A DNA stretch of 64,000 bases from positions 53,506,001 to 53,570,000 of the forward strand of contig NC_043007.1 in the NCBI RefSeq assembly GCF_006345805.1. Direction: 5' to 3'. The notes beneath the pieces are model-generated. The model was not told the origin of the DNA. It saw nothing but the letters and a program-made list of their open reading frames with translations, and made no database searches. Made by a program: the position numbers and the translations under genes. Shown in pieces: positions 6,955 to 61,854 of the stretch (position 1 is its first letter; each line of letters begins with the position of its first letter). The DNA comes from Octopus sinensis (lineage: Eukaryota).

Positions 6955-6965
6955 AAAGGTAAGTA

Positions 6966-14317: not shown

Positions 14318-14345
<28 letters not shown>

Positions 14346-14348
<3 letters not shown>

Positions 14349-14496
14349 TCATCATCATCATCATCATCATCGTTTAGCGTCCGCTTTCCATGCTAGCATG
14401 GGTTGGACGGGTCAACTGGGGTCTGTGAAGCTGGAAGGCTTCGTCAGGCCCAGTCAGATCTGGCAGTGTTTCTACGGGTGGATGCCCTTCCTAACG
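14346..14496 (-). mobile_element. RTE LINE 3' tip with (GAT)n tail
   Basis: (CAT)n CGTTTAGCGTCCGCTTTCCATGCTAGC, as in the other RTE ends. Confidence 0.8.
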
Positions 14497-15871: not shown

Positions 15872-16208
15872 AAACTCTGCTTGCGAAGACCTGTTGAGGC
15901 AAGTGAAATCGAAATCGATCAAAAATCAATGGAAATTGCAGTTGTGATACCTGTGCCAGTGGCACGTAAAAGAACCATCCAAACGTGGCCATTGACAGTG
16001 CCGCCTCAACTGGCCTCAGTGCCGGTGGCACATAAAAAGCACCCACTACACTCACGGAGTGGTTGGTGTTAGGAAGGGCATCCAGCTGTAGAAACACTGC
16101 CAGATCAGACTGGGCCTGGTGCTGCCTCCTGGCTTCCCAGACCCCAGTCGAACTGTCCAACCCATGCTAGCATGGAAAGCGGATGTTAAACGATGATGAT
16201 GATGATGA
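15872..16208 (+). mobile_element. RTE LINE 3' end with (GAT)n tail
   Basis: Ends GCGGATGTTAAACGATGATGATGAT and matches the RTE 3' UTR. Confidence 0.8.
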
Positions 16209-21759: not shown

Positions 21760-24700
21760 TTGTCTTACCATCTCCTACCCAAACCTCACCCCACATTCCC
21801 TTCCCAGTTTTCAGAGTTGGCACTGTCAATGTTGGCACAATGAAAGGTAGGTCTAGTGAGATTGTAGAGATGCTTGAAAGGAGATGGGTTGATGTATGCT
21901 GCATACAAGAGCTAAGATGGAGAGGAACTTCAGCTAGGGTCCTCACAGCCAAGGCACATAGGTATAAAGTCTTCTGACAAGGTAACATGGATGGTGTAGG
22001 GGGTGTAGGTATACTCCTTGCAGAGAAATGGGTGAATAAGGTTATAGAGGTTGTTAGGGTATGTAATAGAGTGCTTAAGCTCAGGCTAGTCCTGCAGAAT
22101 AGCACAGCTACTATTATCTCTGTCTACGCCCCTCATGTGGGGCTACCAAATGATCAGAAGGACCACTTTTATGATACCCTTCTACAGGCTATCTCAAAGA
22201 CGGGTGGCAATGACCTCATCTTTGTGGCTGGAGACTTTAATGGGCATGTCAGACGGGAATCAGGTATCTTCACTGGGGTACATGGTGGCCATGGTATTGG
22301 CACCTGGAATAATGAGGGAACCAGGCTACTAGAGTTCTGTGATGCATGTAACCTTTTAATCTGCATCACTAACTTCATGAAGCCAGACAGCCACCTTATA
22401 ACCTATCAATCGGGGGACTCTGCTAACCAGATTGATTTCATCCTCACAAGACAGCGGGATGCAGAGTTGCTCTTAAATACAAAGACCCTCCCGAGTGAAG
22501 AATGTACCCCCCAGCATAGGCTAGTCGTTAATGACTGTAGGCTCGAGGCCAGAAGAATATCAAGAAGCAGACCAATCCAGAAAAGAAGAATTTGGAAGCT
22601 AAAGAACCCTTCACATGGTCAGAGATTTAGGGACATCTTCATCAATAAATTTGATGAGAGGGAGGAGGAGCTACGGACATCGGACATAGAAGGTAGCTGG
22701 AAATTCCTATGGGACAGCTTGTTGAGTGCCACAGACCAAGTCTGTGGCTGGTGCAAAGTCCCTTCCAGACCTACAGTTACGTGGTGGTGGAATAGTACTG
22801 TAGACAAAGCCATTAGAGCCAAGAAACAGGCCTGGAAAGCCTAGAAGGGTGGGGGTAGCAGGGAACTGTACCTGGTTGCCAAAAGGGAGGCTGGGCAGCT
22901 GGTATACATAGCCAAGAGCGAAGTGGGAAAGAAGAAGTTTGCCAATATCCAGCGACGTGAGGACCAAAGAACTGAGGTGTTTCGGATTGCAAGACAGTGT
23001 GTGAGAGAAAATTGTGATTTCACAGGAAAGAAATGTGTCTGAATGGATGATGGTGCACTTGCTTTTAATGATTCTGAAAAGAAAGAGGCTTGGAGAAGCC
23101 ATTATGAAAGACTTCTGAATGTGGAGAATGAATGGGAGGAGGAGAGCCTGCCAAATGTTGACCCAGTAGAAGGACCAGCTATTTGTATAGTAGATAAAGC
23201 AATTAAGGGTATGAAGCCAGGAAAAGCCCCGGCCCATCAGGAATCACTGCTGAGATGCTTAAAACATCTGGTGGTGTGGTCTAAGGCCTAGTCATCCGCA
23301 TTGTAAACCAGTTCATAATGGAGTGTAGCAGCACCATAGTCAACTGCTACAAGGGTAAAGATGATGCTCTAGATAGAAATAACTACAGGGGTTTCAAACT
23401 GCTGGCTCAGGTGATGAAGGTCACGGAGAGGGTCATCGCCCATCTCATCAGGGAGAGAGTCTGCTTAGATGAGATGCCGTTCAGTTTTGTGCTGCGGTGT
23501 GTGTGAGGAGTTCGCCTTCCTACTTACTAGAACTTTGGTCTTTGCTACATTTTCCACTGATGAGAGGGTCCCCCAATTCCTGGTTTGACAACTGCAGGAG
23601 AAATACATTTCTAAAGATAAACCCCTATACTTAGCTTTTGTGGACTTGGAGAAAGCCTTTGAGAGGGTCCCCAGATCCCTTATCTGGTGGGCGATGCAGA
23701 AACTGGAGATTGACGAATGGTTGATAAGGGCTGTATAGGTTGATAAGGCCCTATACAGAGAGGCCGTTAGTAAGGTTAGGATTGGCAATGAGTATGGTGA
23801 AGAATTTTGGGTAGAATTAGGCGTCCACCAAGGTTCAGCCCTCATTCACCTTCTATTCATCATAGTCCTCCAGGCAATAACAGAGGAATTCAAGATGGGT
23901 TACTCCTGGGAGCTCCTCTATGCTGATGACCTGGCCCTCATAGCAGAATCACTACCGGAACTAGAAAAGAAATTTTGTGTGAAAGCTAGGTTTAGAATCA
24001 AAAGGCCTTAGAGTAAATGTAGCAAAGACCAAAGTTCTAGTAAGTAGGAAGGCGAACTCATCACACACACCCTCAAGTAGGTGGCCCTGCTCGATCTGTA
24101 GAAAAGGTGAAGGTAGAAACTCCATAAGAATGTACCCAGTGTACGCTATGGACACATGAGAGGTGCAGCAACATCAAAGGAAAATTAACCGAGAAGATAG
24201 CTTTCATGTGAGGCAGATTCACAGGGGCAATGGACACCACAGATACTCAGAAAACAGATTCCATCACACTCCAGGGGAAGAAACTAGAAGTAGTTGATAG
24301 TTTCTGCTACCTAAGTGACCAAGTTAGTAGTGGAGGTGGATGCTCAGAGAGTGTCACCACTAGAATAAGTATAGCCTGGGCAAAGTTTAGAAAGCTTCTT
24401 CCCCTACTGGTGACAAAGGGTCTCTCGCTCAGAGTGAAATGTAGATTGTATGATGCATGTGTGCGAACTGCCATACTTCACGGCAGTGAAACACAAGCCG
24501 TGACTGTGGAGGACATGCGTAGGCTTGAAAAAAATGAAGCTGGCATGATCCGCTGGATGTGTAATGTCAGTGTCCATGCACGAAGAGTGTAAACGCCCTG
24601 AGAGAAATGCTGGACATAAGAAGCATCAAATGTGGCATGCAGGAGAGATGTTTGCATTGGTATGGTCATGTACTACGGATGGATGAGGAGAGATGTGTGA

Positions 24701-25960
24701 AGTGCCGCTCCCAAACTGTTGAAGGAATCCGGGATAGAGGTAGATGCAGGAAGACATGGAATGAGGTGGTCAAGCATGACCTTCGAATGTTGGGCCTCAC
24801 AGATGCTATGACGAAAGACCATGACCTCTGGAGATATGCTGTGACTGCAAAGACCCAACAAATGAAGTGAGTTCATGGCTCCCAGGATGGCCTGCTGTGC
24901 TAACCTTGGATCGTAGGGCAGCTTGCTGTGCTAACCTTGGATCGTAGGGTGGCCTGCTGTACTTGAGGAGACCTATTGATGACCTGGCCCTCATAGCAGA
25001 ATCACTACCGGAACTAGAAAAGAAATTTTGTGTGTGAAAGCTAGGTTTAGAATCAAAAGGCTTTAGAGTAAATGTAGCAAAGACCAAAGTTCTAGTTAGT
25101 AGGAAGGCGAACTCATCACACACACCCTCAAGTAGATGGTCCTGCTCGATCTGTAGAAAAGGTGAAGGTAGAAACTCCATAAGATGTACCCATCTTATGG
25201 ACACATAAGAGGTGCAGCAACATCAAAGGAAAATTAACCGAGAAGATAGCTTTCGTGTGTGGCAGATGCACAGGGGCAATAGACACTACAGATACTCAGA
25301 AAACAGATTCCATCACACTCCAGGGGAAGAAACTAGAAGTAGTTGATAGTTTCTGCTACCTAAGTGACCAAGTTAGTAGCGGAGTTGGATGTTCAGAGAG
25401 TGTTACCACTAGAATAAGTATAGCCTGGGCAAAGTACATCTACATCAAAATAAAATTCAAATGGATATTGTAGTTGTGATACCCGTGCCGGTGACATGTT
25501 GGGCCTCACAGAGGAAATGAGAAAAGACCGAGACCTCTGAGATATGCTGTGACTACGAAGACCCGACAAATGAAGTGAGTTCATGGCTCGCAGGACGGCC
25601 TGCTGTGATAACCTTGGATCGTAGAGTGACCTGCTGTGCTTGAGTCAAGAACATTAACATCAACATCAAAATAAAAATCAAATGGAAATTGTAGTTATGA
25701 TACCCATGCCGGTGGCACATAAAAAGCACCATCCGAACATGGCTGATGCCAGCTCTGCCTGACTGGCGTCCATGTTGGTGACACGTAAAAAGCACCAACG
25801 GCATGGGTGGCATTAGGAAGGGCATCCAGCCATAGAAACACTGCCTGATCAGACTGGAGCCTGGTGCAGCCTCCTGGCTTCCCTGACCCCGGTTGAACCG
25901 TCCAACCCATGCTAGCATGGAAAACAGACGTTAAACGATGATGATGATGATGATGATGAT
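21760..25960 (+). mobile_element. RTE LINE, near full-length, degenerate, with internal 3' duplications
   Basis: APE: VGTVNVGTMKG, CIQE, SVYAP, AGDFNGHV, IDFIL. RT: NNYRGFKLL, FVDLEKAFERVP, GVHQGS, LLYADDL. Segment 24980..25440 repeats 23930..24380. The (GAT)n tail ends at about 25960. Confidence 0.9.
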
Positions 25961-26229
25961 ATATCTTTTTGCAAACAACTTGCAAATGCAAGTGCTACCA
26001 GATGAAAGCTCCAGATACTGGATGCTAGCAAGTTTATGAGATCATCAGGAGAGAAGGTTTTGGGGCCTTCTTCTCAATGGCATCATTGCACACCATCTAC
26101 TCCTTCACTGAAATGAAGCCCCACTTGCTAGATCAACTGGTTATATATTTTGCTCAATATTTTTCTACCCATTACTCATTGTCCCTTTTTAACCAAACCC
26201 AGTAGCTTACCTTCTCCACTGTAGTCTGG

Positions 26230-33349: not shown

Positions 33350-35180
33350 AAAAATTGAAATACTGGAAACAGTTCTGCAGAAATTGTCATGCCCAGGCCA
33401 AGACCTCATAACAAGTTACTGGCTGAAGAATTTCACTTTTATCAGCAAGATCTCATACTGTTGTATGGAGAAAGTATAAAGGGCACACAAGAACAGCCCC
33501 AATGGTTATCAACTGCAACCACTCTCCTCATCCTCAAAAATAACCAAACTACACTTACTAAAAATTACTGCCCTACAGCCTGCTAAAACAACATGTACAA
33601 ATTATACACTGGGTGTCTCAATCTATTTTTGCAGGATCATTGTGCCACCAACAACATTATAACACCTGAGCAAGTTGAGGGAAAGAAGGAAGTGTAGGGC
33701 TGCATACAACAGCTATGAATTAAAACAATCCAAGAAAAAGCAGAAAAAAACTTTACAGTAACTTGGCTGGACTACAAGAATGCTTTTGATAATATACCAC
33801 ATAGATGGATTATCAAGGCTTTACAGCTGGCCAAAGTTCCACAATCATTAGTGAGTGCTGTTAAACACCTGACCAATAATTGGTTCATCACTTTGCTCCT
33901 CAGAAGTGATAAGGAGCAGATTAAGTTGGATAGCATTCACTATCAAATAGGTATCTTTCAGGGTGATAGCCTGTCAGTGTTACTCTTTGTCCTCTCATTA
34001 AATCCACTATCATACCTGCTCACAAAGCATAGTGACCAGAGAAATGGATCCAGAAGTATCGCTCATCTTTTCTTTGTCAATGACCTGAAATATCAACCAC
34101 AGGAAAAAACATTTGGACCCAATTTCTGTAGGAAATTGGGATGAAATTTGGTGAATTCAAATGTGCATTTTAAACGATAAAACGGAGAAAAGTTGTGCCC
34201 TCCTCTGGAAACCCAAGAATAAACAGCTTAACAATAGAAACCCTATAGTCAGGTGACAATTATTGGTATCTTGGACAAGATGGGTATATCAGATATTACA
34301 GATTTATAAATAAGGAGAGGACCAGAAATGAATACCTCAGGAGAGCAAAGAAAATATGGTTATCAGAACTCTCAACTTACAACAAGCATATCATCCACAA
34401 CACTTTTGCAGTGCTTACATTTGATCTTTTGAACTGGTCATGGCAAGAACTCAATGAGACAGATGTTTGAACTTGCAAGCTATTCAGTGTTACAGGAAAC
34501 TTCAACATCAATGGAGATGTAGACAGGCTATACTTCCCATGCAAGGATGGTGGCTGTGGTTTCAAATCTGTATTGGTGTCATATGAAGTATAGATTGTGG
34601 CACTAAAATAACATCTGCAGTAGAGGAAAGAGACCAGTAACTATCTTGCCTAAGTTTGTGACCATGAAATCTACGACATAATTAGGATAGTTAATATACT
34701 TGAGGAGAGGTATAAAATAAGAGCTGATTACAGATCTCTCCCTAAGGGGCATTGATAAACAACAAAATTTAAAAAATAGACCAGTTCAATGAGAAGATAG
34801 TACGTGGGTACTTGTCACATAAAATGCAAGCCATACAAGGGATTGATCATGTTAAAAGCTTCGCATAGAGTACTGAAAGCTGCATCTATGCAATCCAAGA
34901 ACAAGAGATCCCCACATGCTGAGAGACCAAGACTGAAGACATCAACTACATTATTGCCAACTGTGAGCAAATGTCTTCCTGATATTATCTTCCCATGAGG
35001 CATAATGTGGTGGCCAGAATAGTCTGGAACAGAATTACAAAAAAGAAAATACCTACAAACGAAGTTGACCATATTGAGGCAGATGGGTAAAAAAATATAG
35101 ATGGAAATTAAAGATTAAAACAGCTATCAAGTTAAAGCACAACCGACCACAAAGAAAAGATATGTTCTGTTGTGGAAATC
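33350..35180 (+). mobile_element. Decayed RLE-type non-LTR retrotransposon (R4/Dong-like)
   Basis: Motifs: KNYCPTAC; WLDYKNAFDNIPHRWI; GIFQGDSLSVLLFVLSLNPLS; HLFFVNDLK; YLPMRHNVVARIVW (RHN after CCHC); KHNRP. Confidence 0.75.
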
Positions 35181-35199
35181 AGCTGTGTCCTCTGGGCAC

Positions 35200-35620
35200 A
35201 AATATGGTTAGAAAAATACAAGAGAAAGAAGACATATATGTACCTTAAGGTTAATTTAGGAAAGACTAAAGTACGACTAACTGACAGAACCCTACCCACC
35301 TCAGATAGGTGGCCATGTTTGATTTGTAGGAAAGGTGTAAGCAGGAACTCCATACAGTGTAAGCTATGGACACACAAGAGGTGCAGTGGATTAATAGGAA
35401 GGTTATCAGAGAAGATAGTTTTCATATATGGAAGATGTACAGAATCCATAAAAACTTTAGAGACTCTGGAAATTGATTCTCTCAAATGCCCTTGTGACTC
35501 ATTAGAGGTAGTAGGTAATTTCTACTACCTAGGGGACCAAATTATTAGTGGGAAATGATGCACAGAGAGTGTGATAGCTAGAATAAGAACAGGATGGAGG
35601 AAATTTAAGCCTTAAATCTA
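35200..35620 (+). mobile_element. RTE LINE internal fragment
   Basis: LKVNLGKTKV...WPCLICRKGVSRNSIQC...LEVVGNFYYLGDQI is homologous to the other RTE copies. Confidence 0.75.
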
Positions 35621-36144
35621 CATGCTACATCATGTCGACCTGATATGGCATGTCATTTCAGCCTGCTACAGATCTGATATAATGATTTGGGATAGAGAAG
35701 AGAAATTGTGTACAGCTGTGGAAATCAGTTACCCCAGCAGATGTTAACATAAAGCTGAAGATCAGTGAAAAAGAGAATCTGCAGTTATTCTATCCAGACT
35801 ACAAGTTAAGGTTTATACACTCACACACACATACGTCCACTGTCTGAAGTTTTGAATTTTCTTATTGGAATAAGAGCTTCTCCTCCAGATTTCTGTTACT
35901 TAAGCTAGCCTCAATCAGCTATAAGTGACAAGTAGAAGACGTCATAATTATATTTGTCAAAATATGCACTGAAATTAATTTGTTCGACTGTCCTCAATTT
36001 ACATAGTGGTCGATCATTGCCTCCACTAGGAATTAATATTGAATATCGGTGTCATAAGTATGACGCTGTTCCAAGGGAAATAACTTTCAATATACTCAAT
36101 ACAACACAGTCGAGGCTTGTTGGAGCGTATACGTGTCAGCCAAC

Positions 36145-37401
36145 ATGCAGTGCAGATTTTTCCGTCCAGTGTCGTTGTTTAGATTAATCCAAACGTTTTC
36201 TCCACACAGTTTCACTTCTCTCCGAATTTCCGCACCTGGGAGTACTCTGCAACGTGTGAATTACCAGTCGACTGAAGTTGAAAAGAAACTTTTTACACCA
36301 GGTCCTCTATGCACCACATCGACAGTGCGTGAAGCTATGTTAAAAGATCTAGGTTCGCGAGACATTCAATTCATCCAATGTGTAAGAAATATTCGACAGA
36401 AAATTCTGGACATCGCACAAGTAAGCAATCTTGAATATACGTCAATACCACTCCAAGGCAGCGGAACTTACGCTGTCGAAGCAGTCTTTCAATCAACAGT
36501 TCCTCGGAGTGATGGTAAAGTTCTGATCTTAGAAAACGGTGCCTACGGTAAACGTATCGCAAAAATCTGTGAAGTCGCAGGTATTTCAAAACGTGTACTG
36601 AGCTTCCCTGAAAGCTCTGCTGTAAATGTTAATGTTGTTGAAGATGTTTTGAAAGATGATCCCTCATTTACTCATGTCGCTATTGTTCACTGTGAAACAA
36701 GTTCTGGAGTTTTCAACCCGATTGTGGATGTCGGGCAGATCGTCAAAAAATACCTTCAGAATTGTATTTATTTTGTGGATGCAATGAGTAGTTTTGGTGC
36801 AGTTCCGCTTGATTTCGCCGCCGGTGACATTGACTTCATGGTCAGCTCAGCAAACAAATGTTTACAAGGTGTTCCTGGTTTCTCTTACGTAGTTGCAAAG
36901 ACTAGAAAGTTATTAGAATGCCGTGGATATTCTCGCTGTCTTACTTTGGATCTTTATGATCAATATCAAAACTTAGAAGCGACAGGCCAGTTTCGATTTA
37001 CTCCGCCAACACATACGATGCTGGCATTTCAGCAAGCTATCGTGGAATATGAAAAAGAAGGTGGCTTGAAAGGAAGGTCAGCTAGATATATGGAAAATCG
37101 ATCTATTTTGGGAAAAGGTATGAAAACACTTGGTTTCAAAGAGTTACTGACAGATCCAAATCAGGCAAATTATATCATAACTTCATTTTTCTTTCCCAGC
37201 GATCCACATTTTGATTTTAATACATTCTACAGCAAATTAAACGATTTAGATTTTGTAATATACCCTGGCAAAGTATTGGAAGCGAACTGCTTTCGAATTG
37301 GAACAATTGGTGAGGTTTACCCCTCTGATGTTAAGGAGTTATTAAAAGCTATCAAAACGGTTTGCCTCGAAATGAATATTACACTCCCTTTGGACGATTA
37401 A
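36145..37401 (+). CDS. phnW: 2-aminoethylphosphonate-pyruvate transaminase (AEP aminotransferase, class V PLP enzyme), intronless, with putative mitochondrial presequence
   Basis: Uninterrupted 418-codon ORF from an ATG in CAAC-ATG context (the track starts at upstream GTG 36133). PhnW motifs: LFTPGP, DLGSRD, QGSGTYAVEA, NGAYGKR, VHCETSSG, VDAMSSFG, SSANKCLQGVPGF (PLP lysine), QFRFTPPTH, IYPGK, FRIG. Confidence 0.93.
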   Translation: MQCRFFRPVSLFRLIQTFSPHSFTSLRISAPGSTLQRVNYQSTEVEKKLFTPGPLCTTSTVREAMLKDLGSRDIQFIQCVRNIRQKILDIAQVSNLEYTSIPLQGSGTYAVEAVFQSTVPRSDGKVLILENGAYGKRIAKICEVAGISKRVLSFPESSAVNVNVVEDVLKDDPSFTHVAIVHCETSSGVFNPIVDVGQIVKKYLQNCIYFVDAMSSFGAVPLDFAAGDIDFMVSSANKCLQGVPGFSYVVAKTRKLLECRGYSRCLTLDLYDQYQNLEATGQFRFTPPTHTMLAFQQAIVEYEKEGGLKGRSARYMENRSILGKGMKTLGFKELLTDPNQANYIITSFFFPSDPHFDFNTFYSKLNDLDFVIYPGKVLEANCFRIGTIGEVYPSDVKELLKAIKTVCLEMNITLPLDD

Positions 37402-37750
37402 TTTCAAACTATTTAGATAAAAACTTTGTTACTTTATATCTATTTTCATATCTAATTTTACATTATTGGCGTTGAGGGTGCTAAGTTTTCTAATCATGAG
37501 CTTTGTGTGTGTGTGTGTGTGTTTGCGATTGCGCTGGTGTTTATCAGTCGCTGTTATATTTCTCTAATAAGTATCTTGATTTGAGGGTGTATGCTGAAAT
37601 GTAAGCGTTTACACCTTGGATGAGCAATTTCAACGCTCTGCAAAATGCAATATTTTCATTTCATTTATTGCTTCTGGTGTCAGTACATCGTTATATTGCG
37701 ACCTGATCACCAAACACAGTTCCACAGTATATGAATTTTCTGCTGCTTAA

Positions 37751-37756
37751 AATAAA
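37751..37756 (+). promoter_or_regulatory. Candidate polyadenylation signal of the AEPT gene
   Basis: AATAAA 350 nt after the stop codon, directly before a (TA)n tract. Confidence 0.4.
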
Positions 37757-37800
<44 letters not shown>

Positions 37801-37808
<8 letters not shown>

Positions 37809-38082
37809 ATTCGAGACAAAATCACTATTTTAAAACCAAACAAGGAAAGACTTAATCAATACATAAAATTTTAATATAAATTAAATAAACCGCCACTACA
37901 ATTGTAATCAGTATCAAAATTTGATACTGATTAGAAGATCGAAAATCCACCTGAAGATTGTCGGTAGCAGACATGAAACAATTGTAGTGGCGGTTTATTT
38001 AATTTATATAAAAATTTTATGTATTGATTAAGTCTTTCCTTGTTTGGTTTTAAAATAGTGGTTTTGTCTCGAATTATATTAT
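37801..38082. repeat. Foldback element (about 100-bp inverted arms) with hammerhead-containing centre
   Basis: ATAATATAATTCGAGACAAAA...CCGCCACTACAATTGT is mirrored by ACAATTGTAGTGGCGG...TTTTGTCTCGAATTATATTAT. An inner hairpin AATCAGTATCAAAATTTGATACTGATT is present. Confidence 0.92.
37947..37990 (+). ncRNA. Minimal type I hammerhead ribozyme motif
   Basis: CCAC-CTGAAGA-T[TGTC ggtagca GACA]T-GAAA-C-AATT-G-TA-GTGG. Stem I is CCAC/GTGG, stem II is TGTC/GACA and stem III is the palindrome ACAATTGT. The predicted cut is after GUA at 37986. Confidence 0.7.
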
Positions 38083-38162
38083 ATAATATTTTACTATAAA
38101 ATTGGATTTAACCCTAAATCTGATTTTTCCCTGTAATTTTGGATTCATTCCCTAATATTTAT

Positions 38163-38224
<62 letters not shown>

Positions 38225-38503
38225 GTGTGTATGTATATATATATATAATCAACTACAAAAACGGAGGGAAAAAAGAAAGAAAAGGGAAATAAATATTCGG
38301 TCGTATTAATGTTAATTGTTGAAATTATTTTGTTTTTTCTTTTTACTGTTGCAGTGATATGCATTTGTTTTATGTACACTATGCATATTGGTGCCTCCCT
38401 GAGTAAGCTAAACTTCCTATTCTCTTTCCTTAGATTTCGCACTTTGCCTGTTATAATTTTATACTGATGTTGACTAAATTATGATATTCTTACCTGGTTA
38501 AAA

Positions 38504-39505: not shown

Positions 39506-40302
39506 GGCCCATGGCTTTTGCGGGCCCTCTTAGATTGGTAAGATTGATGTAATTAGTGTTTCTCTTGAACCTTTGTAAGTTGTCATCTGTGGAAAAGACA
39601 TAAGACTGGAAAGAATTCCAGAGCATTGATGTTCTGGGAAGGAAGGACTAAGCATAGTGGTTATTGTGAAGATTGGTCACAACATGGATGATGAGAGGAG
39701 AGACAAGTAGAAAAATAATATCTGAGTGGAGATGTCATAAGCTCTATCAGTTCCAAGAAGCTGAGGTCATTATAGTAGCTTTTTATAGTAGATAAGGTAG
39801 AGAGAGAAGTGTACCTGTAGGCCAGAAGCTGGTGTCTGTCTGTGAGTAACTATGCCAATCAATTGGGCAACTCTTCTCTGGATGTTTGTGTATGAAGTTA
39901 TTCTCAGACCAGAGATCCAGACCAACTGCTTCCTCCAATAAAGTAGACACAAGTGACAGTGCTAACTTAGACAATGGGCTAACTCTACTACCTAATAACT
40001 GGAATGATTACCCTGACAGGTTTTCACACATTTTTCATCTACCATATTTCACTCACAAAGCTATGGTAGAAGACACATGCTGCACAATTGGATTGAGCCA
40101 GAACGTATGTGGCTTCAAGGTGAGCTTCTTAACTATACAACTATGACTGCACCCATTTTGCCTAACTGAACTATTACTACATCACTGTTAAATGGATCTG
40201 AAATTATAGATCCATTCAGATTGTCTACAAATGAGAAATATAGAAATTAACTTGGAAATCTTTTTTTTATGCTTTTTGCTTTGCATCTTTATAGATATAT
40301 TT

Positions 40303-43300
40303 CATCATCATCATCATCGTTTAACATCTGCTTTCCATGCTAGCATGGGTTGGACGATTTTGACTGAAGGCAGGTGAACCAGATGGCTGCACCTGGCTCC
40401 AATCTTGATCTGACAGAGTTTCTACAGCTGGATGCCCTTCATAACACCAACCACTGTAGTGTAGTGGGTGCTTTTTACGTGCCACCAGCATGGGGGCCAG
40501 TCAGGTGGTACTGGCAATGACCTTGCTCAAATCTTTTTACACATGTCACCGGCACAGGAGCCAGTAAGGTGATGCTGGTAATGATCAAGCTCGAATGGTA
40601 CCCTTGTACGTACCACCGGCATGGAAGCCAGTTAGCCACTCTGGCAACAATCACGCTTGGATGATGCTCTCTGGCAATGATCACGCTCGGATGGTGTTCT
40701 TGGCACCCTACTAGCATGGGCACAAGTGCCAGTAAGGTGACGCTGGTAACGATCACACTTGAATGGTGCCTTTTATGTGCCACTGGCACGGAAGCCGGTT
40801 AGCCGCTCTGTCAATGATCACACTAGTATGGTGCTCTTTGCACCCCGCTAGCCTGGAAACCAGTCATCGAATCTGATTTTGATTTCACTTGCCTCAATAG
40901 GTCTTCACAAGCAGAGTTCAGTATCCAAAGAAGGAAAAGGTACGCATAAGTGGGCTGGTTACGCTCCTGGCATAGGCCATGGGTTATGGTTTCATTTGGC
41001 TTGACGGGTCTTCTTAAGCACAGTATATTTCCAAAAGTCTCGGTCACTAGTCATTTCCTTGGTGAGGCCTAAAGTTCGAAGGTCGTGCTTCACCACTTCA
41101 TCCCAGGTCTTCCTGGGTCTACCTCTTCTACAGGTTCCCTCAACTGCAAGGGTGAGGAACTTTTTCACACAGCTATCCTCATCCATTCTCGCCATATGAC
41201 CATACCAGCGCAGTCGTCTCTCTTGCACACTACATCTGACGCTTTTAGGTCCAACATTTCTCTCAAGGTACTTACACTCTGTCAAGTATGCACACTGACA
41301 TTACACATTCATCAGACCATACAGGCTTCATTCCTTGCGAGCTAACGCATGTCCTCAGCAGTCACACCCCATGTTTCACTGCCACGTAGCATGGCTGTTC
41401 ATACACAAGCATCATACAGTCTACCTTTGTCACCAGCAGAGAGGCCCTTTGTCACCAGCAGAGGTAAGAGCTCTCTGGACTTTGCCCAAACTATTCTTAT
41501 TCTAGCAGCTACACTTTCAGAGCACCCTCCCCTGCTACTGACTTGGTCACCTAGGTAACGGAAGCTATCAACTACTTCTAGTTTTTCTCCTGGGATGCGG
41601 CAGAAGTTGTTCTCTGCGAATTTTCAGTGTTTATTGCTCCCGAGCATCTGCCACATACAAAAACTATCTTCCCCGTTAGCCTTCCTTTGATATTGCTGCA
41701 CCTCTTATATAGCTTACACTGGGTACATCTTATAGAATTTCTACCTACGCCTCTACTACAGATTGGGCAGGGCCATCTACCTGAAGGGATTTGTGGTTTG
41801 CCTACCTTCCTACTTATTAGGACTTTGGTTTTAGCTAGGTTGATTCTAATCCTTGTTTCCACACTTGAAACTTCTCCTCTAGTTCTGATAGTGACTCAGC
41901 AATTAGAGCAAGGTAATCAGCATAGAGGAGTCTCCTGTCTTGAATTCCTCTGTTATTGTCTGGGGGACTATGATAAATAGGAGGGGGCTGAGGACTGAAC
42001 CTTGGTGGACCCCTACCTCCACCCTGAATTCTTCAGTGTACTCATTGCCAACCCTCACCTTACTTACAGCATCCCTGTACATGGCTTGCACAGCTCTCAC
42101 TAACCATTCATCTATCCCTAGTTTCCTCATTGACCACCAGATAAGGGATCGGGGGACCCTGTCAAAGGCTTTCTCCATGTCAACGAAAGCCAGGTGTAGG
42201 GGCTTAACTTTGGCTAGGTATTTCTCCTGCAGCTGTCTTACCAGAAATATGGCATCAGTGATGCTTTTCCCTGGCACAAAACCAAACGGACTCTGTCCCT
42301 AATCAGTTGGGCTATGATCCTCTCCGTAAACTTCATTACCTGATCCAACAGCTTGATACCTCTGTAATTATTTGTATCTAAAGCATCACCTTTACCTTTG
42401 TAGCAGTTGACTATTATGCTGCTACACTAGTCATTAGCAAATTTTTTCTTATCTGCTTCCCCTCTGGCTAAATAAACCTGCCTCCTAGTTTTCCTTCTGG
42501 CAGTCTGATACACTTCTCTGCTACCACTGTTCTTCCAGTCTTTCTAAGCCTGTTTCTTTTGTCTAATAGCCCTGTCAACAACATTGTTCCACCACCACGT
42601 TATTTTGGGTCGAGAGGGAACTTTGCACCATCCACAGATCTGGTCGGTGGCCCATAGCAGGTTGTCCCATACGAACCTCCAGTTGTCTTCTACACCATGT
42701 GAAGCTATATCCCCTTCTATTTCTTCAAAGGCTTTGAGTAATATATCTCTAAATCTCTGCCCATTTGCAGGATCTTTAAGTCTCCAGACCCTTCTTCTTG
42801 CTGGTCGTCTTCTGGGCATCCATTTAGCCCTGATCCTGAAGTCACTAACTAGCAGTCTATGTTGTGGGGTACATTCTTCACCTGGGAAGGTTTTGGCATT
42901 TATAAGCAGCTATCTTTCCCTTTTCCTGGTGAGGATGTAGTCAGTCTCACTAGTGTGTCTGCCAGAGCGGTAGGTAACTAGGTGACTTGCAGGTTTTCTG
43001 AAGTTAGTATTGCAAACCATAAGATCATTTGTGTCACAGAACTCCAGCAGCCTGGTTCCCTCTTCATTGCGAGAGCCAAAACCATAGCCTCCATGTATGC
43101 CATGGAAGCCCACTGAATGTTGGCCAACATGTCCATTGAAGTCACCATCCACAAAGAGAAGGTCCCTGTCATTCGTCAACGTGGTAGTCTGCAAGAGGGT
43201 GTCATAGAATCAGTCTTTCTGTCCACCGGGTAGCCCTGGTTGAGGGGCATAGGCTGAGATAATGGTTGCTAACCCATGATAGAACACTAATCTAATCCTA

Positions 43301-46529: not shown

Positions 46530-49500
46530 GATGTATGTATGTATGTATTCTGTATATTCATGTTTGTGTGTGTGTATGTATATAGGTTTTTGTGACTATG
46601 TACTGTGTCTGTATGTATGGATGTGTATCCCCATATGTGTGGATGTGTCACCATATGTATACTTGTGTGAAGTGAAGTATGTTTCAGTCTTCATTTGCAT
46701 GTGTGTGTGTGTGTGTATGTGTGCTTGCCTGTTCATATTACCTAGGTACCTATCTGTCTGTATGTCTATCTGTTTACTTTCATATCTATTTGCCTGCATA
46801 CAAACACACATACATTTACATAACAGCCTACTAACTATTCTACCTGTATATAAATATAAACTGGGGGTATGATTATCTACTACGTATATTTTCTATCTAG
46901 TACTGGGGATGTTTCATTTATGAGGATGTACTCCTGTATTTATCTGAGTGTTTGGATAAAATGCAGATGTCGAGTTGACCCAGGTTGCTTCCATGTTGGT
47001 AGAGTATGGAGGACTGTTTTTTTGTTGTCATATTGTCTCAAAGGTTCATTTAGTCTTTCTGCAATGCTACTTGTTGACTCCCTTATGTATGTCATGTTCA
47101 TGTCTTTACAACCACTGTAAACTACATTTCAAGTTCTACAGTTAATGCCAGAGCTAATCCTACATACCATGTAGTTATCATTAGTGCATAAGATATTCTC
47201 AAAGGGGTACATCCTACATAGTTGTGATCTGATGACGTTCCCTGGTTTTTCAATAATCTTAATGTTGAGTTTGGTCTCCTTCAGAGCTTTTCTAAATCTA
47301 CGGATTAATTCTCCATGGGCTGTGGCCTCTACAAACATCACTCCTTGATATTTGTCGGTTTTATACCACGTGTTCACCCTGTTTGCTTTGTCACAAGCTC
47401 TTTGTATCCTATTCCAGTCTTTGTTTTTATATCTAGGGCAGGTCCCTAGAAATGTCCCCAGATGTCTGTGTGAGCATGGAAGATCTCAGTAAAATCAATA
47501 CTTGCAACCACTCCAACGACCTGTAGTGTAGTATGGATGTGATTTCACTCTACCCATCTATAGACATAGATTTTGCTGTGGAGAAATGCACTGAGATAAT
47601 CTGAGAGTGAAGTAGAGTTCCGTGAAGTTAACACAAGGGAACTGGGCTTCCCCCTTATACTATGCTATGACAGTGGCTATTTAGATGACCATGACCTCAG
47701 TAGATTCTGCCCCACCAGGTCACAGAGGGGAAGACCACCCACCATCACCTCAGCAGTGAAGAAAAGCACCACAGAGTGCTGGAGTGGCTGGACTGTACCC
47801 ACCCAAAACCTTGAGAACAACAATCAGGTGAAAGAAATGATTGCACATGCAACAGGAGCTAGCATAAGAACCATGCAGGTTCACGGTGCAGCCATTAGTG
47901 TCAGTGTAGCTGATGTCGCCAGCTTCTTCATGACCTGGTGGGACAGAAAATTTAAGCAGTCCTTAGCAGAACAGTCCACAACTCTTCTACTTTACAGTAG
48001 GTATGTAGACAACATAAATATCCTAGTTAAGACCAACTCTAATAACTGTAATGTAGAAACTGAGAGGAACATTACGGAGATAATCCAGCAAGTAGTTAAC
48101 TCCATCCACCAAAGTATCAAGCTAACTATAGATTACCCCACTAGTCACCCCAGCAATAGACTCCTTGCCCTTGATACTGAACTTTGGTTAGAGACTGTGA
48201 ACAACAGAGTGCAGCTCCTCCACTCCTATTACATGAAAGCTGTAGCTTCAAAATATGTTGTTCACAAGAACTTAGCTTTGTTACACTGTGCTGGTATGGC
48301 CATGTGGTGAGAATGGATGTGAATAGCTGTGTGAAAAAGTGCCACACCCTAGTGGTTGAGGGAACCTGTGGAAGAGGTAGACCCAGGAAGACCTGGGATG
48401 AGGTGGTGAAGCATGACCTTTGAACATTGGGTCTCACCGAAGCAATGACTAGTGACCGGGACCTTTGGAAATATGCTGTGCTTAAGAAGACTCGGCAAGC
48501 TCAAGTGAGACCATAACCTTGTGGCCTATGCCAGGGGTGTAACCAGCCCACTTATGCATACCTTTCCTTCATTGGACACTAAACTCTGCTTGCAAAGACC
48601 TGTTGAGGCAAGTGAAATTGAAATTGAAATCAAATTCGATGACTGGCATCTATGCTAGAGGAGCGCTAAGAGTACCCTACAAGCATGATTGTTGCCAGAG
48701 CAACAAGCTGGCCTCTGTGCCGGTGGCATGTAAAAAACACCATTCAAGCATGATCGTTACCTGCGCCGCCTTACTAGCACTTGTGCTGGTGGCATGTAAA
48801 AAAACATTTGAGCGAGTTTGTTGCCAGTGCCGCTGGACTGGCTCCTGTGCAGGTGGCACATAAAAAGCACCATTTGAGCTTGGCCGTTGCCAGTACCACC
48901 TGACTGGCCCTCATGCCAGTGGCACGTAAAAGCACCCACTGCACTCTCAGAGTGGTTGGCGTTGGGAAGGGCATCCAGCTGTAGAAACTTTGCTAGATCA
49001 GATTGGAGTCTGGTGCAGCCATCTGGTTTGACAGACCTCAGTCAAATCATCCAACCCATGCTAGCATGGAAAGCGGACGTTAAACGATGATGATGATGAA
49101 CATGAAAATTAACATACTGAAAGCAGACTTATTTAGGATAATGAACAATGGGTCCCCACTATGCAAACCCTATGAAACGAAGAAACATATACAAAACTTC
49201 ATGCACTGCATGTAATTCTCTGGATATGATCAGAAAGATAGGGTTCGAGAACACAGGAGTGCTAGAAAGAAGTTAGATAACATTATATGTAATGAAACCA
49301 GTGGTATCTGCCCTAGATATAGAAGCAAAGACTGGAATAGGATACAAAGAGCTTGTGACAAAGCAAACAGAGTGAACACGTGGTATAAAACCGACAAATA
49401 TCAAGGAGTGATGTTTGTAGAGGCCACAGCCCATGGAGAATTAATCTGTAGATTTAGGAAAGCTCCGAAGGAGACCAAACTCAACATTAAGATTGTTGAA

Positions 49501-61853: not shown

Positions 61854-61854
61854 A

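What the first reader, a model, noticed from the sequence alone, without database searches (positions are those of the whole stretch)
36145..37401. Intact, intronless phosphonate (AEP) aminotransferase with a mitochondrial-type presequence in a metazoan repeat desert
Seen: this is the only clean long ORF in 64 kb. It has no introns, all PhnW catalytic motifs (DAMSSFG, SSANKC, FRFTPP, YPGK, FRIG), an AT-rich third-position bias like the flanks, and visibly more CpG than the decayed TEs around it. About 45 extra N-terminal residues (MQCRFFRPVSLFRLIQTFSPHSFTSLRISAPGSTLQRVNYQS) are Arg/Ser/Leu/Phe-rich and lack acidic residues. Established: AEP transaminase interconverts phosphonoacetaldehyde and 2-aminoethylphosphonate. 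It acts biosynthetically after PEP mutase and phosphonopyruvate decarboxylase, or catabolically with PhnX, and molluscs make AEP phosphonolipids such as ceramide-AEP. Inference: this may be a retrogene or a domesticated bacterial transfer that places a C-P-bond pathway step in mitochondria. No partner genes are in the window.
Basis: partly seen in the sequence, partly recalled or inferred. Interest (0 to 1): 0.8.

Follow-up and report, generated by a model that had tools for sequence, protein, structure and literature searches.

The report
Octopus intronless AEP transaminase gene
This is the ordinary octopus copy of an enzyme most invertebrates use to make the phosphonate head-group of their membrane lipids; its one unusual feature is that cephalopods lost all seven ancestral introns, probably by copying the gene back from mRNA.

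Summary
The ORF is real: window 36145-37401 (+), 418 aa, in Octopus sinensis chromosome CM016869.1. It is a full-length 2-aminoethylphosphonate:pyruvate transaminase (PhnW/AepZ family). It scores above curated cut-offs, the catalytic Asp/Lys/Arg are present, and the model fits solved PhnW at 1.3 Å.

It is not a bacterial transfer into octopus. Orthologues occur from sponges to amphioxus. All 58 sampled animal sequences, cephalopods included, form one clade against 83 bacterial sequences.

The gene is under strong purifying selection (dN/dS 0.07-0.12). O. bimaculoides already carries this annotation.

The coding sequence is intronless in three Octopus species, Argonauta and an unnamed sister clade (probably squid or cuttlefish). 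Oyster, scallop and apple snail share seven introns at identical positions and phases, and one is shared with Nematostella. The best reading is an old RNA-mediated loss of all introns, that is, retrogene replacement. No poly(A) or target-site duplication survives.

The basic, acid-poor N-terminal extension of about 45 residues is real but ancestral. It is exon 1 in intron-bearing orthologues. 79 animal orthologues show the same composition, and animal PEP mutases carry a similar extension. Mitochondrial targeting is plausible but untested.

The claim "only long ORF" is wrong, because LINE ORFs are longer. This is a known enzyme, and the intron loss is a modest new observation.

The parts
36145..37401 (+). 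Complete single-exon coding sequence (418 aa plus stop) of 2-aminoethylphosphonate:pyruvate transaminase (AEPT; PhnW/AepZ family)
   Evidence: ORF. NCBIfam equivalog models score above their cut-offs. PDB PhnW chains match at E about 1e-105. AlphaFold model has mean pLDDT 86.9 and fits 9kk8/1m32 with TM 0.95-0.96 and rmsd 1.3 Å. dN/dS is 0.07-0.12.
36145..36273 (+). N-terminal extension (residues 1-43), a putative mitochondrial matrix-targeting presequence
   Evidence: It lies outside the region aligned to bacterial enzymes and has pLDDT below 50. It holds 5 Arg, 0 acidic residues and 11 Ser/Thr. dN/dS is 0.29-0.42, which is relaxed but below 1. It corresponds to exon 1 of intron-bearing orthologues. 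Localisation was not tested.
36283..37398 (+). Catalytic class-V (fold-type I) aminotransferase core, residues 47-418, including an animal-type C-terminal tail (VCLEMNITLPLDD)
   Evidence: Pfam PF00266. Alignment A4 shows the C-terminal tail in the animal sequences and not in the three bacterial ones. Structure match.
36778..36780 (+). Codon for Asp212. It aligns with the Asp at chain position 167 of Salmonella AEPT 1m32, which I recall from the literature as Asp168, the partner of the PLP pyridine nitrogen.
   Evidence: Invariant column in alignments A4 and A5. Numbering.
36856..36858 (+). Codon for Lys238, the PLP Schiff-base lysine. It aligns with Lys193 of Vibrio PhnW and with chain position 193 of Salmonella 1m32.
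   Evidence: Invariant column. PDB entry 9kka is described as the K193M mutant of PhnW. Numbering.
37294..37296 (+). Codon for Arg384 in FRIG. It aligns with chain position 339 of 1m32, which I recall as Arg340, the residue that binds the phosphonate group.
   Evidence: Invariant column. The functional role is from memory of the 1m32 paper and was not checked here.
35955..36144 (+). Upstream block conserved among Octopus species, an unnamed octopod contig and, partly, Argonauta. It is the putative core promoter and 5' UTR and contains the palindrome GTCATAAGTATGAC at 36051-36064.
   Evidence: Alignment A2. CpG observed/expected is 0.95 for 35900-36144. Its function is inferred only.
35801..38457 (.). 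CpG-undepleted patch (observed/expected about 0.95-1.0) that covers the gene and its immediate flanks, inside CpG-poor transposon-rich DNA
   Evidence: Sliding 1257-bp windows. The same contrast between coding sequence and flanks is seen in Argonauta, L004 and L012.

Best explanation
This is the single, functional Octopus sinensis orthologue of the animal 2-aminoethylphosphonate (AEP):pyruvate transaminase.

Reaction (inferred from the family): with pyridoxal phosphate bound to Lys238, the enzyme interconverts phosphonoacetaldehyde plus L-alanine and AEP plus pyruvate.

Role (inferred): in the animal it most likely acts as the last step of AEP biosynthesis (PEP mutase, then phosphonopyruvate decarboxylase, then AEPT). 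This supplies the head-group of ceramide-AEP phosphonolipids, which octopus muscle contains.

Origin (shown by comparison): the gene was inherited vertically within animals. Its ancestral form had at least seven coding introns, with exon 1 encoding a basic, acid-free N-terminal extension.

Intron loss (inferred mechanism): on the cephalopod stem, before octopods split from a sister clade that is probably Decapodiformes, all introns were lost at once. The most likely route is a reverse-transcribed mRNA copy that replaced the intron-bearing parent (retrogene replacement). That copy carried the presequence-coding part with it.

Targeting (inferred, untested): the extension probably acts as a mitochondrial matrix-targeting peptide, as in the other animal orthologues.

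My probabilities for the separate parts: enzyme identity and orthology 0.97; RNA-mediated loss of all introns in cephalopods 0.8; biosynthetic role 0.8; mitochondrial targeting 0.6.
For: Identity:
- Curated HMM cut-offs are exceeded.
- The protein is 48-50% identical to solved PhnW, with E about 1e-105, TM 0.95-0.96 and rmsd 1.3 Å.
- Asp212, Lys238 and Arg384 are invariant.

Orthology and vertical descent:
- Hits at 52-65% identity come from sponge, cnidarians, annelids, a brachiopod, molluscs, arthropods, echinoderms, hemichordates and amphioxus.
- The animals, cephalopods included, are monophyletic in 50/50 NJ bootstraps against 83 bacterial or metagenomic sequences. Bivalves are nearest by distance.
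- The animal-type C-terminal tail is shared.

Selection:
- dN/dS is 0.065-0.12 across pairs with dS 0.1-1.4.

Intron evidence:
- The coding sequence is single-exon in O. sinensis, in O. vulgaris (99.8% identical) and in O. bimaculoides as far as the assembly gap near codon 403.
- It is also single-exon in Argonauta (79% identical) and in the genomic contigs L004 and L012, which form the sister clade of the octopods with 99% support.
- Ostrea, Pecten and Pomacea each have eight coding exons. Their seven introns map to Octopus residues about 40-45, 91, 125, 205, 260, 313 and 368, with identical phases.
- Nematostella shares the phase-2 intron at residue 313 and has a phase-1 intron at the boundary between extension and core.
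- Octopus PEP mutase keeps at least eight coding exons over 67 kb, so intronlessness is not a general octopus trait.

Pathway:
- PEP mutase is present in O. vulgaris and Argonauta, 82-83% identical to the crystallised Mytilus enzyme.
- Ceramide-AEP (CAEP) and N-methyl-CAEP were measured in O. vulgaris muscle (PMC12335516).
- All three AEP-pathway genes were reported in a coral genome (PMC3640398).

Presequence:
- 79 orthologues with long extensions have 3.0% Asp+Glu against 12.2% in the core, 10% Arg against 4.6%, 22.7% Ser+Thr against 11.9%, and a mean net charge of +5.5.
- Animal PEP mutases carry similar extensions.
- PEP mutase and phosphonopyruvate decarboxylase are predicted to be organelle-targeted in rhizarian protists (bioRxiv 10.64898/2026.09.23.753574).
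Against: - No retroposition scars were found. There is no poly(A) remnant and no target-site duplication. These would be expected to have decayed.
- Relocation is not shown. The bivalve neighbour, a proteasome alpha-subunit gene placed head-to-head, is absent from the cephalopod loci. That is weak evidence because cephalopod genomes are heavily rearranged (my own knowledge, not tested here).
- An unannotated relic of the parent gene cannot be excluded.
- The taxon of L004 and L012 is inferred from the tree, not known.
- I found no direct evidence of expression. A 5'-UTR intron is possible.
- A simple amphipathic-helix test on the extension was no better than shuffled sequences (46% of shuffles scored as high). 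No dedicated targeting predictor was available.
- Phosphonopyruvate decarboxylase was not searched for in octopus.
- Deep branching within animals is unresolved. One NJ tree placed the cephalopods as sister to all other animals, which is probably a long-branch effect.
Confidence: 0.75

Rival explanations
1. Introns were lost in place. A cDNA of the gene recombined with the original locus (reverse-transcriptase-mediated gene conversion) and erased all seven introns without moving the gene. On this reading it is not a relocated retrogene.
For: No poly(A) tail or target-site duplication is detectable. The presequence-coding 5' end and a conserved upstream block are retained. That is easier to explain if the old promoter was kept.
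Against: The proteasome alpha-subunit gene that lies head-to-head with AEPT in both bivalves is absent within 36 kb upstream in the window and within 10 kb in Argonauta and O. vulgaris. Argonauta has a RhoGEF gene and a globin gene as neighbours instead. Both observations are weak, given cephalopod genome rearrangement.
Confidence: 0.2
2. A bacterial phnW was transferred horizontally into the octopus or cephalopod lineage and then domesticated.
For: The coding sequence is intronless. Identity to bacterial PhnW is high at 47-55%.
Against: Animal orthologues are more similar (up to 65% outside cephalopods) and occur in most invertebrate phyla. Cephalopods fall inside a 58-sequence animal clade in 50/50 bootstraps against 83 bacterial sequences. 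They share the animal C-terminal tail and the N-terminal extension. GC3 and codon-position composition match octopus PEP mutase. A much older bacterial origin of the eukaryotic gene as a whole is not addressed here.
Confidence: 0.02
3. The enzyme works mainly in catabolism. It would deaminate dietary or recycled AEP to phosphonoacetaldehyde, because octopuses eat AEP-rich molluscs and crustaceans, rather than make AEP.
For: The reaction is reversible, and the bacterial PhnW enzymes closest in structure are catabolic (PMC10590968 abstract). Arthropod orthologues exist. I did not check whether arthropods make phosphonolipids.
Against: Octopus and Argonauta keep PEP mutase, whose only known role is to form the C-P bond. 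Octopus tissue contains CAEP. No phosphonoacetaldehyde hydrolase was looked for or seen. The two roles do not exclude each other.
Confidence: 0.15
4. The N-terminal extension is not a mitochondrial presequence. It could be a linker, target the protein elsewhere, or be skipped.
For: The amphipathic moment is no higher than in shuffled sequences. The sequence itself is poorly conserved, with dN/dS 0.3-0.4. Crustacean, insect, echinoderm and hemichordate orthologues lack the extension, and so do some bivalve isoforms. The enzyme can therefore work without it.
Against: The basic, acid-poor, Ser/Thr-rich composition recurs in 79 orthologues without sequence conservation, which is typical of transit peptides. 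Skipping it is unlikely in octopus, because the next Met is residue 65, after the conserved KKLFTPGPL start of the fold. No hydrophobic core of the signal-peptide type is visible in residues 1-43. PEP mutase carries a similar extension.
Confidence: 0.3
5. It is a dead or unexpressed retrocopy that only looks intact.
For: It sits among transposons with no neighbouring host gene in the window. I found no direct expression data.
Against: The ORF is intact in at least six cephalopod lineages whose synonymous sites are saturated. dN/dS is 0.07-0.12 and all catalytic residues are kept. No other AEPT appears among octopus proteins in the top hits.
Confidence: 0.02

Closest known systems
Bacterial 2-aminoethylphosphonate:pyruvate aminotransferase PhnW (Salmonella 1m32; Vibrio vulnificus 9kk8/9kka; 7e7g), EC 2.6.1.37
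   Same: The fold is the same (TM 0.95-0.97, rmsd 1.2-1.3 Å), identity is 41-50%, and the PLP lysine, Asp and phosphonate-binding Arg are the same.
   Different: The bacterial enzymes have no N-terminal extension and no animal-type C-terminal tail. From my own knowledge, phnW usually sits with phnX in catabolic operons. The octopus gene stands alone in a eukaryotic chromosome.
Animal AEP transaminase orthologues, for example O. bimaculoides XP_014784584.1, 'AEP--pyruvate transaminase-like' in Ostrea, Pecten and Mytilus, and the Acropora gene described in PMC3640398
   Same: It is the same gene family and is orthologous: 57-65% identity to bivalves and gastropods, and 98.8% over 401 residues to O. 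bimaculoides. The basic N-terminal extension and the C-terminal tail are the same kind.
   Different: Bivalve and gastropod genes have seven coding introns, Nematostella has three and Acropora four. The cephalopod genes have none.
Retrogene replacement (a processed copy takes over and the multi-exon parent is lost), for example amphioxus SYCP1 (PMC5803294)
   Same: A single-exon functional gene stands where relatives have a multi-exon gene. No parent copy is seen, and the gene is under purifying selection.
   Different: No poly(A) tail or target-site duplication survives here, relocation is unproven, and the event is old because a whole cephalopod clade shares it.
PntC-AEPT fusion proteins (Treponema denticola 6pd1/6pd2) and AepZ of the bacterial aepXYZ biosynthetic clusters
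   Same: They are biosynthetic-direction AEP transaminases working downstream of PEP mutase. TIGR03301 'PhnW-AepZ' scores 441 bits against a cut-off of 361.
   Different: Identity is only 30-37%. The bacterial proteins are fused to, or clustered with, cytidylyltransferase or PepM genes. The octopus gene is unfused and unclustered.

Membership tests
AEP:pyruvate aminotransferase (PhnW/AepZ, EC 2.6.1.37) | Scores above the curated whole-protein cut-off of the equivalog HMMs | tested here: met
   PRK13479 473.6 bits against 296; TIGR02326 458.4 against 400.8; TIGR03301 441.5 against 360.8
AEP:pyruvate aminotransferase (PhnW/AepZ, EC 2.6.1.37) | Class-V / fold-type I aminotransferase fold that superposes on solved AEPT | tested here: met
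   AlphaFold model with pLDDT 86.9. Best PDB matches are 9kk8, 9kka, 1m32 and 7e7g, with TM 0.95-0.97 and rmsd 1.2-1.3 Å
AEP:pyruvate aminotransferase (PhnW/AepZ, EC 2.6.1.37) | PLP Schiff-base lysine in SSANKC, the Asp that pairs with the pyridine nitrogen, and the Arg that binds the phosphonate | tested here: met
   Lys238, Asp212 and Arg384 align with chain positions 193, 167 and 339 of 1m32 and are invariant in 38 animal and 3 bacterial sequences. The residue roles are from memory of the 1m32 paper, plus the title of PDB entry 9kka (K193M mutant).
AEP:pyruvate aminotransferase (PhnW/AepZ, EC 2.6.1.37) | Catalyses AEP + pyruvate <-> phosphonoacetaldehyde + L-alanine | not testable with these tools
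   Needs a recombinant enzyme assay
Animal AEP biosynthetic pathway (PEP mutase -> Ppd -> AEPT) | PEP mutase encoded in the same lineage | tested here: met
   O. vulgaris P0181 and Argonauta P0176 are 82-83% identical to Mytilus PEP mutase and carry the EDKLFPKTNS motif. O. sinensis itself was not seen by name.
Animal AEP biosynthetic pathway (PEP mutase -> Ppd -> AEPT) | Phosphonopyruvate decarboxylase encoded in the same lineage | not tested
   No suitable animal query sequence was at hand, and I ran no further search on it
Animal AEP biosynthetic pathway (PEP mutase -> Ppd -> AEPT) | The product (AEP lipids) is present in the organism | tested here: met
   Literature only: CAEP and N-methyl-CAEP in O. 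vulgaris arm muscle (PMC12335516). Cephalopods are listed among CAEP-containing animals (PMC9174665).
Processed retrogene / retrogene replacement | Lacks all introns that the ancestral or parental gene has in its coding region | tested here: met
   Seven conserved introns in Ostrea, Pecten and Pomacea, one of them shared with Nematostella; none in six cephalopod(-like) loci
Processed retrogene / retrogene replacement | Poly(A) remnant at the 3' end and flanking target-site duplications | tested here: inconclusive
   None found. The test has little power, because the event predates the split of two cephalopod clades whose synonymous sites are saturated.
Processed retrogene / retrogene replacement | Lies at a new locus, unlinked to the parental neighbours | tested here: inconclusive
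   The bivalve neighbour (a proteasome alpha-subunit gene) is absent from the window and from the cephalopod loci. Only 10-36 kb was examined and the Pomacea neighbour was not informative.
Processed retrogene / retrogene replacement | The parent copy is lost and the gene is single-copy | tested here: inconclusive
   Only one AEPT locus per octopod appears among the best 120 protein hits. Whole genomes could not be searched for unannotated relics.
Mitochondrial matrix-targeting presequence | N-terminal extension outside the mature fold | tested here: met
   Bacterial alignments start at residue 46-49. pLDDT is below 50 for residues 1-41.
Mitochondrial matrix-targeting presequence | Arg-rich, rich in hydroxylated residues, devoid of acidic residues, net positive | tested here: met
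   Residues 1-43 hold 5 Arg, 0 Asp/Glu and 11 Ser/Thr. The chance of no acidic residue at the core's frequency is 0.006. 79 orthologues show the same bias.
Mitochondrial matrix-targeting presequence | Potential to form an amphipathic helix | tested here: inconclusive
   The maximum hydrophobic moment is 0.60 (residues 10-20) and is not above shuffles: 46% of shuffles reach it. This is a crude test. TargetP and MitoFates were not available.
Mitochondrial matrix-targeting presequence | Imported into mitochondria and cleaved there | not testable with these tools
   Needs a localisation experiment or N-terminal proteomics
Recent horizontal transfer from bacteria | Nests within a bacterial clade, is absent from related animals, or has foreign base composition | tested here: not met
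   Animals are monophyletic in 50/50 bootstraps. Orthologues occur in most invertebrate phyla. GC1/2/3 is 0.49/0.38/0.33, against 0.51/0.39/0.30 for octopus PEP mutase.

The most novel reading that the evidence does not exclude
The whole animal C-P bond pathway may run inside mitochondria. Both its first enzyme (PEP mutase) and its last (AEPT) carry ancestral presequence-like extensions. In cephalopods the last step has been encoded for hundreds of millions of years by a retrogene that replaced its seven-intron parent. With a single exon and no usable internal start, alternative first exons are no longer possible. Cephalopods would then make only the long form, whereas some bivalves also appear to have a presequence-less isoform.
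Probability: 0.35. Interest if true: 0.45.

Novelty: new member of a known kind. Interest (0 to 1): 0.25.

Why it matters
The enzyme and its pathway are long established in molluscs, and the gene is already annotated in a sister species. The finding therefore does not open a new system.

Three modest points follow from the analysis:
- It is a clean, datable example of wholesale intron loss (retrogene replacement) of a metabolic gene shared by a cephalopod clade. It could serve as a rare genomic change marker once Nautilus and named squid genomes are checked.
- Comparative evidence suggests that animal AEP synthesis is mitochondrial. That would link C-P bond formation to mitochondrial PEP supply, and it can be tested with simple fusions.
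- The public gene models need correcting. The O. vulgaris model is mis-spliced, and the C-terminus of the O. bimaculoides model is an artefact of an assembly gap.

Tried and rejected
- Bacterial contamination or recent transfer: rejected by phylogeny, taxon distribution and composition.
- An 'intron' in the O. bimaculoides RefSeq model (437 aa, gene span 3.5 kb): rejected. The genome has a run of N immediately after codon 403, and the model bridges that gap to a spurious downstream exon.
- The O. vulgaris 321-aa, 9.9-kb model as an 'intron-bearing parent': rejected. The locus holds the full 418-codon ORF at 99.8% identity, and the model is mis-spliced.
- Search for target-site duplications or a poly(A) tail around the gene: only chance-level short repeats and (TA)n arrays were found.
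- Synteny by tblastx and blastn between the window, Argonauta, and the bivalve and snail loci: only shared short repeat elements matched. No proteasome, RhoGEF or globin exons were found in the window.
- Hydrophobic-moment test for an amphipathic presequence helix: not significant.
- Logan contigs from SRR11869385, SRR11869390 and SRR11869394 as expression evidence: rejected. They end in (TA)n on both sides and look genomic.
- Scan of bacterial genomes with the single protein: it returned one distant fused PntC-AEPT-like locus and no pepM. The metagenome scan supplied the bacterial outgroups and a PepM query.
- Literature look-up of the run accessions, to name the L004, L009 and L012 organisms: nothing found.
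- Sarkar et al. 2003 on T. cruzi PEP mutase: not held.
- Rfam and tRNA scans near the gene: nothing found.
- Pfam scans of 14 further window ORFs: only a sub-threshold Pif1 helicase match, in one ORF.
Full report
WHAT IS THERE. The window is Octopus sinensis chromosome CM016869.1 (assembly GCA_006345805.1), roughly 53.506-53.570 Mb. The protein's only exact match is on that record. An uninterrupted ORF runs from ATG 36145 to the stop ending at 37401 on the + strand and encodes 418 aa. There are stops in frame immediately upstream, the ATG has an A at -3, and the next in-frame Met is residue 65.

The protein exceeds the curated cut-offs of three NCBIfam equivalog models for 2-aminoethylphosphonate (AEP) transaminase: PRK13479 473.6 bits against 296, TIGR02326 458.4 against 400.8, and TIGR03301 441.5 against 360.8. 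It matches the solved PhnW/AEPT structures 9kk8, 1m32 and 7e7g at E values from 1e-106 to 1e-89. An AlphaFold model built on a 38-sequence alignment has mean pLDDT 86.9. It superposes on those structures with target TM-scores of 0.95-0.97 and rmsd 1.2-1.3 Å.

Asp212, Lys238 and Arg384 align with chain positions 167, 193 and 339 of Salmonella AEPT and are invariant across the animal and bacterial sequences aligned. PDB entry 9kka is a K193M mutant of Vibrio PhnW, which confirms the identity of the catalytic lysine. The enzyme identification is therefore secure.

- The N-terminal extension is real. Alignments to bacterial enzymes begin at residues 46-49. Residues 1-41 have pLDDT below 50 and no predicted secondary structure. 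Residues 1-43 contain 5 Arg, no Lys, no Asp/Glu and 11 Ser/Thr.
- The CpG observation is real and strong. Observed/expected is 0.97 in the ORF, against a window median of 0.34 and 0.16 in the 5 kb upstream. Argonauta and two further cephalopod-like loci show the same contrast.
- GC3 is 0.33, close to the flanks and to octopus PEP mutase exons at 0.30.
- The statement that this is the only clean long ORF in 64 kb is wrong. A LINE element at about 5.4-10.1 kb has ORFs of 353, 156, 558 and 282 aa, with CCHC knuckle, endonuclease and zf-RVT domains. Several other ORFs of 280-300 aa exist.
- 'Intronless' is demonstrated for the coding region only.

IT IS AN OLD ANIMAL GENE, NOT A TRANSFER INTO OCTOPUS. 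The best 120 database hits (52-100% identity) are almost all animal. They include other octopods, many bivalves and gastropods, a chiton, a brachiopod, annelids, a priapulid, crustaceans, insects, a myriapod, a sea spider, echinoderms, hemichordates, amphioxus, cnidarians and a sponge. Many are already named AEP--pyruvate transaminase. The O. bimaculoides protein XP_014784584.1 sits in the same 90% cluster and carries that name.

In a neighbour-joining tree with 80 metagenomic (presumably bacterial) PhnW, two bacterial PDB sequences and one Sphaerochaeta sequence, the 58 animal sequences formed one clade in 50 of 50 bootstraps, cephalopods included. The nearest sequences to octopus by distance, after cephalopods, are bivalves. 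Octopus also shares an animal-type C-terminal tail that the three bacterial sequences in alignment A4 lack.

Deep branching among animals is not resolved. A smaller tree placed the long cephalopod branch as sister to all other animals, and the larger one placed it next to a lophotrochozoan-rich clade. Bacterial enzymes are only slightly less similar (47-55%) than distant animal ones.

THE GENE IS FUNCTIONAL. Pairwise Nei-Gojobori dN/dS for the whole gene is 0.065-0.12 between O. sinensis, O. bimaculoides, an unnamed octopod (92% identical), Argonauta and the two sister-clade sequences, over dS from 0.1 to above 1. The ORF is intact in every one of these. No second AEPT-like protein from any octopus appears among the top hits.

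INTRON HISTORY. The coding sequence is a single exon in several cephalopod or cephalopod-like loci:
- O. sinensis (the window).
- O. vulgaris, with 418 codons at 99.8% identity. The public 321-aa model there is mis-spliced.
- O. bimaculoides, up to an assembly gap that begins just after codon 403. The RefSeq model bridges that gap to a spurious exon.
- Argonauta hians, 413 codons at 79% identity.
- Two genomic contigs of unnamed origin, L004 (from a 52.9-kb ENA contig) and L012 (a 4.4-kb Logan contig).

L004 and L012 form the sister group of the octopods with 99-100% bootstrap support. Their 90% cluster has many members from many sequencing runs. They are most likely decapodiform cephalopods, but that is an inference.

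By contrast, exact spliced reconstruction of the oyster (Ostrea edulis), scallop (Pecten maximus) and apple-snail (Pomacea canaliculata) genes gives eight coding exons each. Their seven introns fall at homologous positions with identical phases. In octopus residue numbering these are about 40-45 (phase 1), 91 (phase 1), 125 (phase 0), 205 (phase 1), 260 (phase 1), 313 (phase 2) and 368 (phase 1).

Nematostella has three introns. One has the same position and phase as the mollusc intron at residue 313. Another is phase 1 and lies at the boundary between the extension and the core. The coral Acropora gene is reported with four introns (PMC3640398).

The intron-bearing state is therefore ancestral, and the cephalopod lineage lost all seven introns. 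Octopus genes are not generally intron-poor: O. vulgaris PEP mutase has at least eight coding exons spread over 67 kb.

Simultaneous loss of every intron points to an RNA intermediate. One route is a retroposed copy that replaced the parent, as described for amphioxus SYCP1 in PMC5803294. The other is conversion of the original locus by a cDNA. I could not separate these two routes:
- No poly(A) remnant or target-site duplication is detectable.
- The head-to-head proteasome alpha-subunit neighbour seen in both bivalves is absent from the cephalopod loci.
- Only tens of kilobases were compared.

THE N-TERMINAL EXTENSION IS ANCESTRAL. In oyster, scallop, snail and Nematostella the first exon encodes the extension, and intron 1 lies at its junction with the catalytic core. 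Among the retrieved orthologues, 79 have extensions of at least 36 residues. These are unrelated in sequence but uniform in composition:

| Measure | Extension | Core |
|---|---|---|
| Asp+Glu | 3.0% | 12.2% |
| Arg | 10.0% | 4.6% |
| Ser+Thr | 22.7% | 11.9% |

The extension is less acidic than the core in every one of the 79. Mean net charge is +5.5, and 81% have no acidic residue in the first 20 positions. This is the classical signature of a matrix-targeting presequence, which is established general knowledge. The relaxed but still constrained dN/dS of 0.29-0.42 in this segment fits that reading.

Animal PEP mutases, including those of Octopus and Argonauta, carry a similar extension of 35-40 residues. 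The crystallised Mytilus chain begins at an internal Met of the genomic model. In rhizarian protists, PEP mutase and phosphonopyruvate decarboxylase are predicted to be targeted to mitochondrion-related organelles.

Some evidence points the other way:
- A crude hydrophobic-moment test on the octopus extension was no better than shuffled sequences.
- Crustacean, insect, echinoderm and hemichordate orthologues, and some bivalve isoforms, lack the extension.
- No targeting predictor or localisation data were available.

Mitochondrial targeting is therefore plausible, at about 0.6, and it is not something the retro-event created. One consequence is specific to cephalopods. With a single exon and no in-frame Met between residue 1 and residue 65, which lies inside the fold, a presequence-less isoform cannot be produced by alternative first exons.

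LIKELY ROLE. Octopus and Argonauta encode PEP mutase at 82-83% identity to the Mytilus enzyme, including the EDKLFPKTNS motif. From my own knowledge, the EDKX5NS motif is diagnostic for true PEP mutases. O. vulgaris muscle contains ceramide-AEP and N-methyl-ceramide-AEP (PMC12335516), and cephalopods are listed among the animals that contain this lipid (PMC9174665). The most likely role is therefore the final step of AEP biosynthesis, converting phosphonoacetaldehyde plus alanine to AEP plus pyruvate. Because the reaction is reversible, a part in the breakdown of dietary AEP is not excluded. Phosphonopyruvate decarboxylase and phosphonatase were not searched for.

COMPARISON WITH WHAT IS KNOWN, AND NOVELTY. 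As an enzyme this is a textbook member of the PhnW/AepZ family. As a gene it is the orthologue of an already annotated animal gene. Absence of partner genes from the window is normal for a eukaryote. The unreported element, as far as my literature searches went, is that cephalopods carry an intronless replacement of a seven-intron ancestral gene. That is a new instance of a known phenomenon. The suggestion that animal AEP synthesis is mitochondrial is a reasonable hypothesis that cheap experiments could test.

VERDICT. Interest is low to moderate at 0.25.

Noticed in passing
window 5395-10112 (+): A LINE-type retrotransposon with long open frames: a 353-aa gag-like ORF with a CCHC zinc knuckle (5395-6456), a 156-aa ORF, a 558-aa ORF with an apurinic-type endonuclease domain (6966-8642) and a 282-aa ORF with the zf-RVT domain (9264-10112). 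Local GC rises to 0.45-0.54. These ORFs are longer than the AEPT ORF in part, which contradicts 'only long ORF'. Another endonuclease/RT fragment lies at 21987-22844.
   Followed up: partly
window 37798-38085, flanked by (TA)n at 37758-37808 and 38155-38247: A near-perfect inverted repeat (108-nt arms, 98% complementary, 72-nt loop) lies between two TA microsatellites, about 400 bp downstream of the AEPT stop. It looks like a MITE or foldback element inserted into a (TA)n tract. It is also present in O. vulgaris.
   Followed up: partly
window about 2360-2510, 14340-14420, 16060-16200, 25805-25965, 40290-40450, 48945-49100; Argonauta L002 6580-6745, 7805-7950, 13780-13945: A dispersed repeat of about 150 bp, resembling a SINE, occurs many times in the window on both strands. 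Copies in the Argonauta hians locus are 70-88% identical, so this is an old octopod repeat family. No tRNA-like gene was detected by ARAGORN.
   Followed up: partly
window 61000-62900 and 62607-63083 (+): This is a second CpG-undepleted patch (observed/expected up to 1.17), the highest in the window. Next to it is a 158-aa ORF with a sub-threshold match to the Pif1 helicase 2B domain (23 bits against a cut-off of 23.9). It may be a young Helitron-type fragment.
   Followed up: no
O. vulgaris locus L003 9809-11062; O. bimaculoides locus L008 about 11209 onward: The public gene models are wrong in both species. The O. vulgaris 321-aa protein (a 9.9-kb model) skips the first 64 codons and splices out of an intact 418-codon ORF. 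The O. bimaculoides XP_014784584.1 C-terminus (36 unrelated residues) arises because the assembly has a run of N starting just after codon 403.
   Followed up: yes
proteins P0181, P0176, P0135, P0137, P0152, P0163 (animal PEP mutases); O. vulgaris locus L095: Animal PEP mutases carry a basic N-terminal extension of 35-40 residues. The crystallised Mytilus chain starts at an internal Met of the 329-aa genomic model, just after '...KRA'. This suggests the first enzyme of the pathway is also organelle-targeted. The O. vulgaris gene spans 67 kb with at least eight coding exons.
   Followed up: partly
orthologue N-termini listed (for example P0011, P0025, P0031 against P0020, P0023, P0048): Some bivalves have short isoforms that start with Met a few residues before the conserved KK-LFTPGP. 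Many long forms have an in-frame Met at the same place ('...KMSDKK', '...AMADKK'). This hints at alternative starts that would give forms with and without the presequence. Octopus has no Met there.
   Followed up: no
window 33851-35558 (+): Degenerate reverse-transcriptase-like and Cys/His-rich ORF fragments of a retrotransposon end a few hundred bases upstream of the conserved AEPT upstream block. They gave no Pfam hit above threshold. The sequence from about 35717 onward is shared with O. bimaculoides but not with Argonauta.
   Followed up: partly
window 36051-36064: A perfect 14-bp palindrome, GTCATAAGTATGAC, followed by GCTG, lies about 85 bp upstream of the ATG inside the conserved upstream block. 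O. bimaculoides has a 10-bp insertion at this point that repeats adjacent sequence. It could be a transcription-factor site.
   Followed up: no
metagenome loci L051, L055, L069, L078; L013 (Sphaerochaeta): Bacterial relatives show the known fused architectures: PepM fused to a nucleotidyltransferase next to AEPT, and a 611-aa nucleotidyltransferase-AEPT fusion of the PntC-AEPT type. These are biosynthetic contexts, unlike classical phnWX operons.
   Followed up: no
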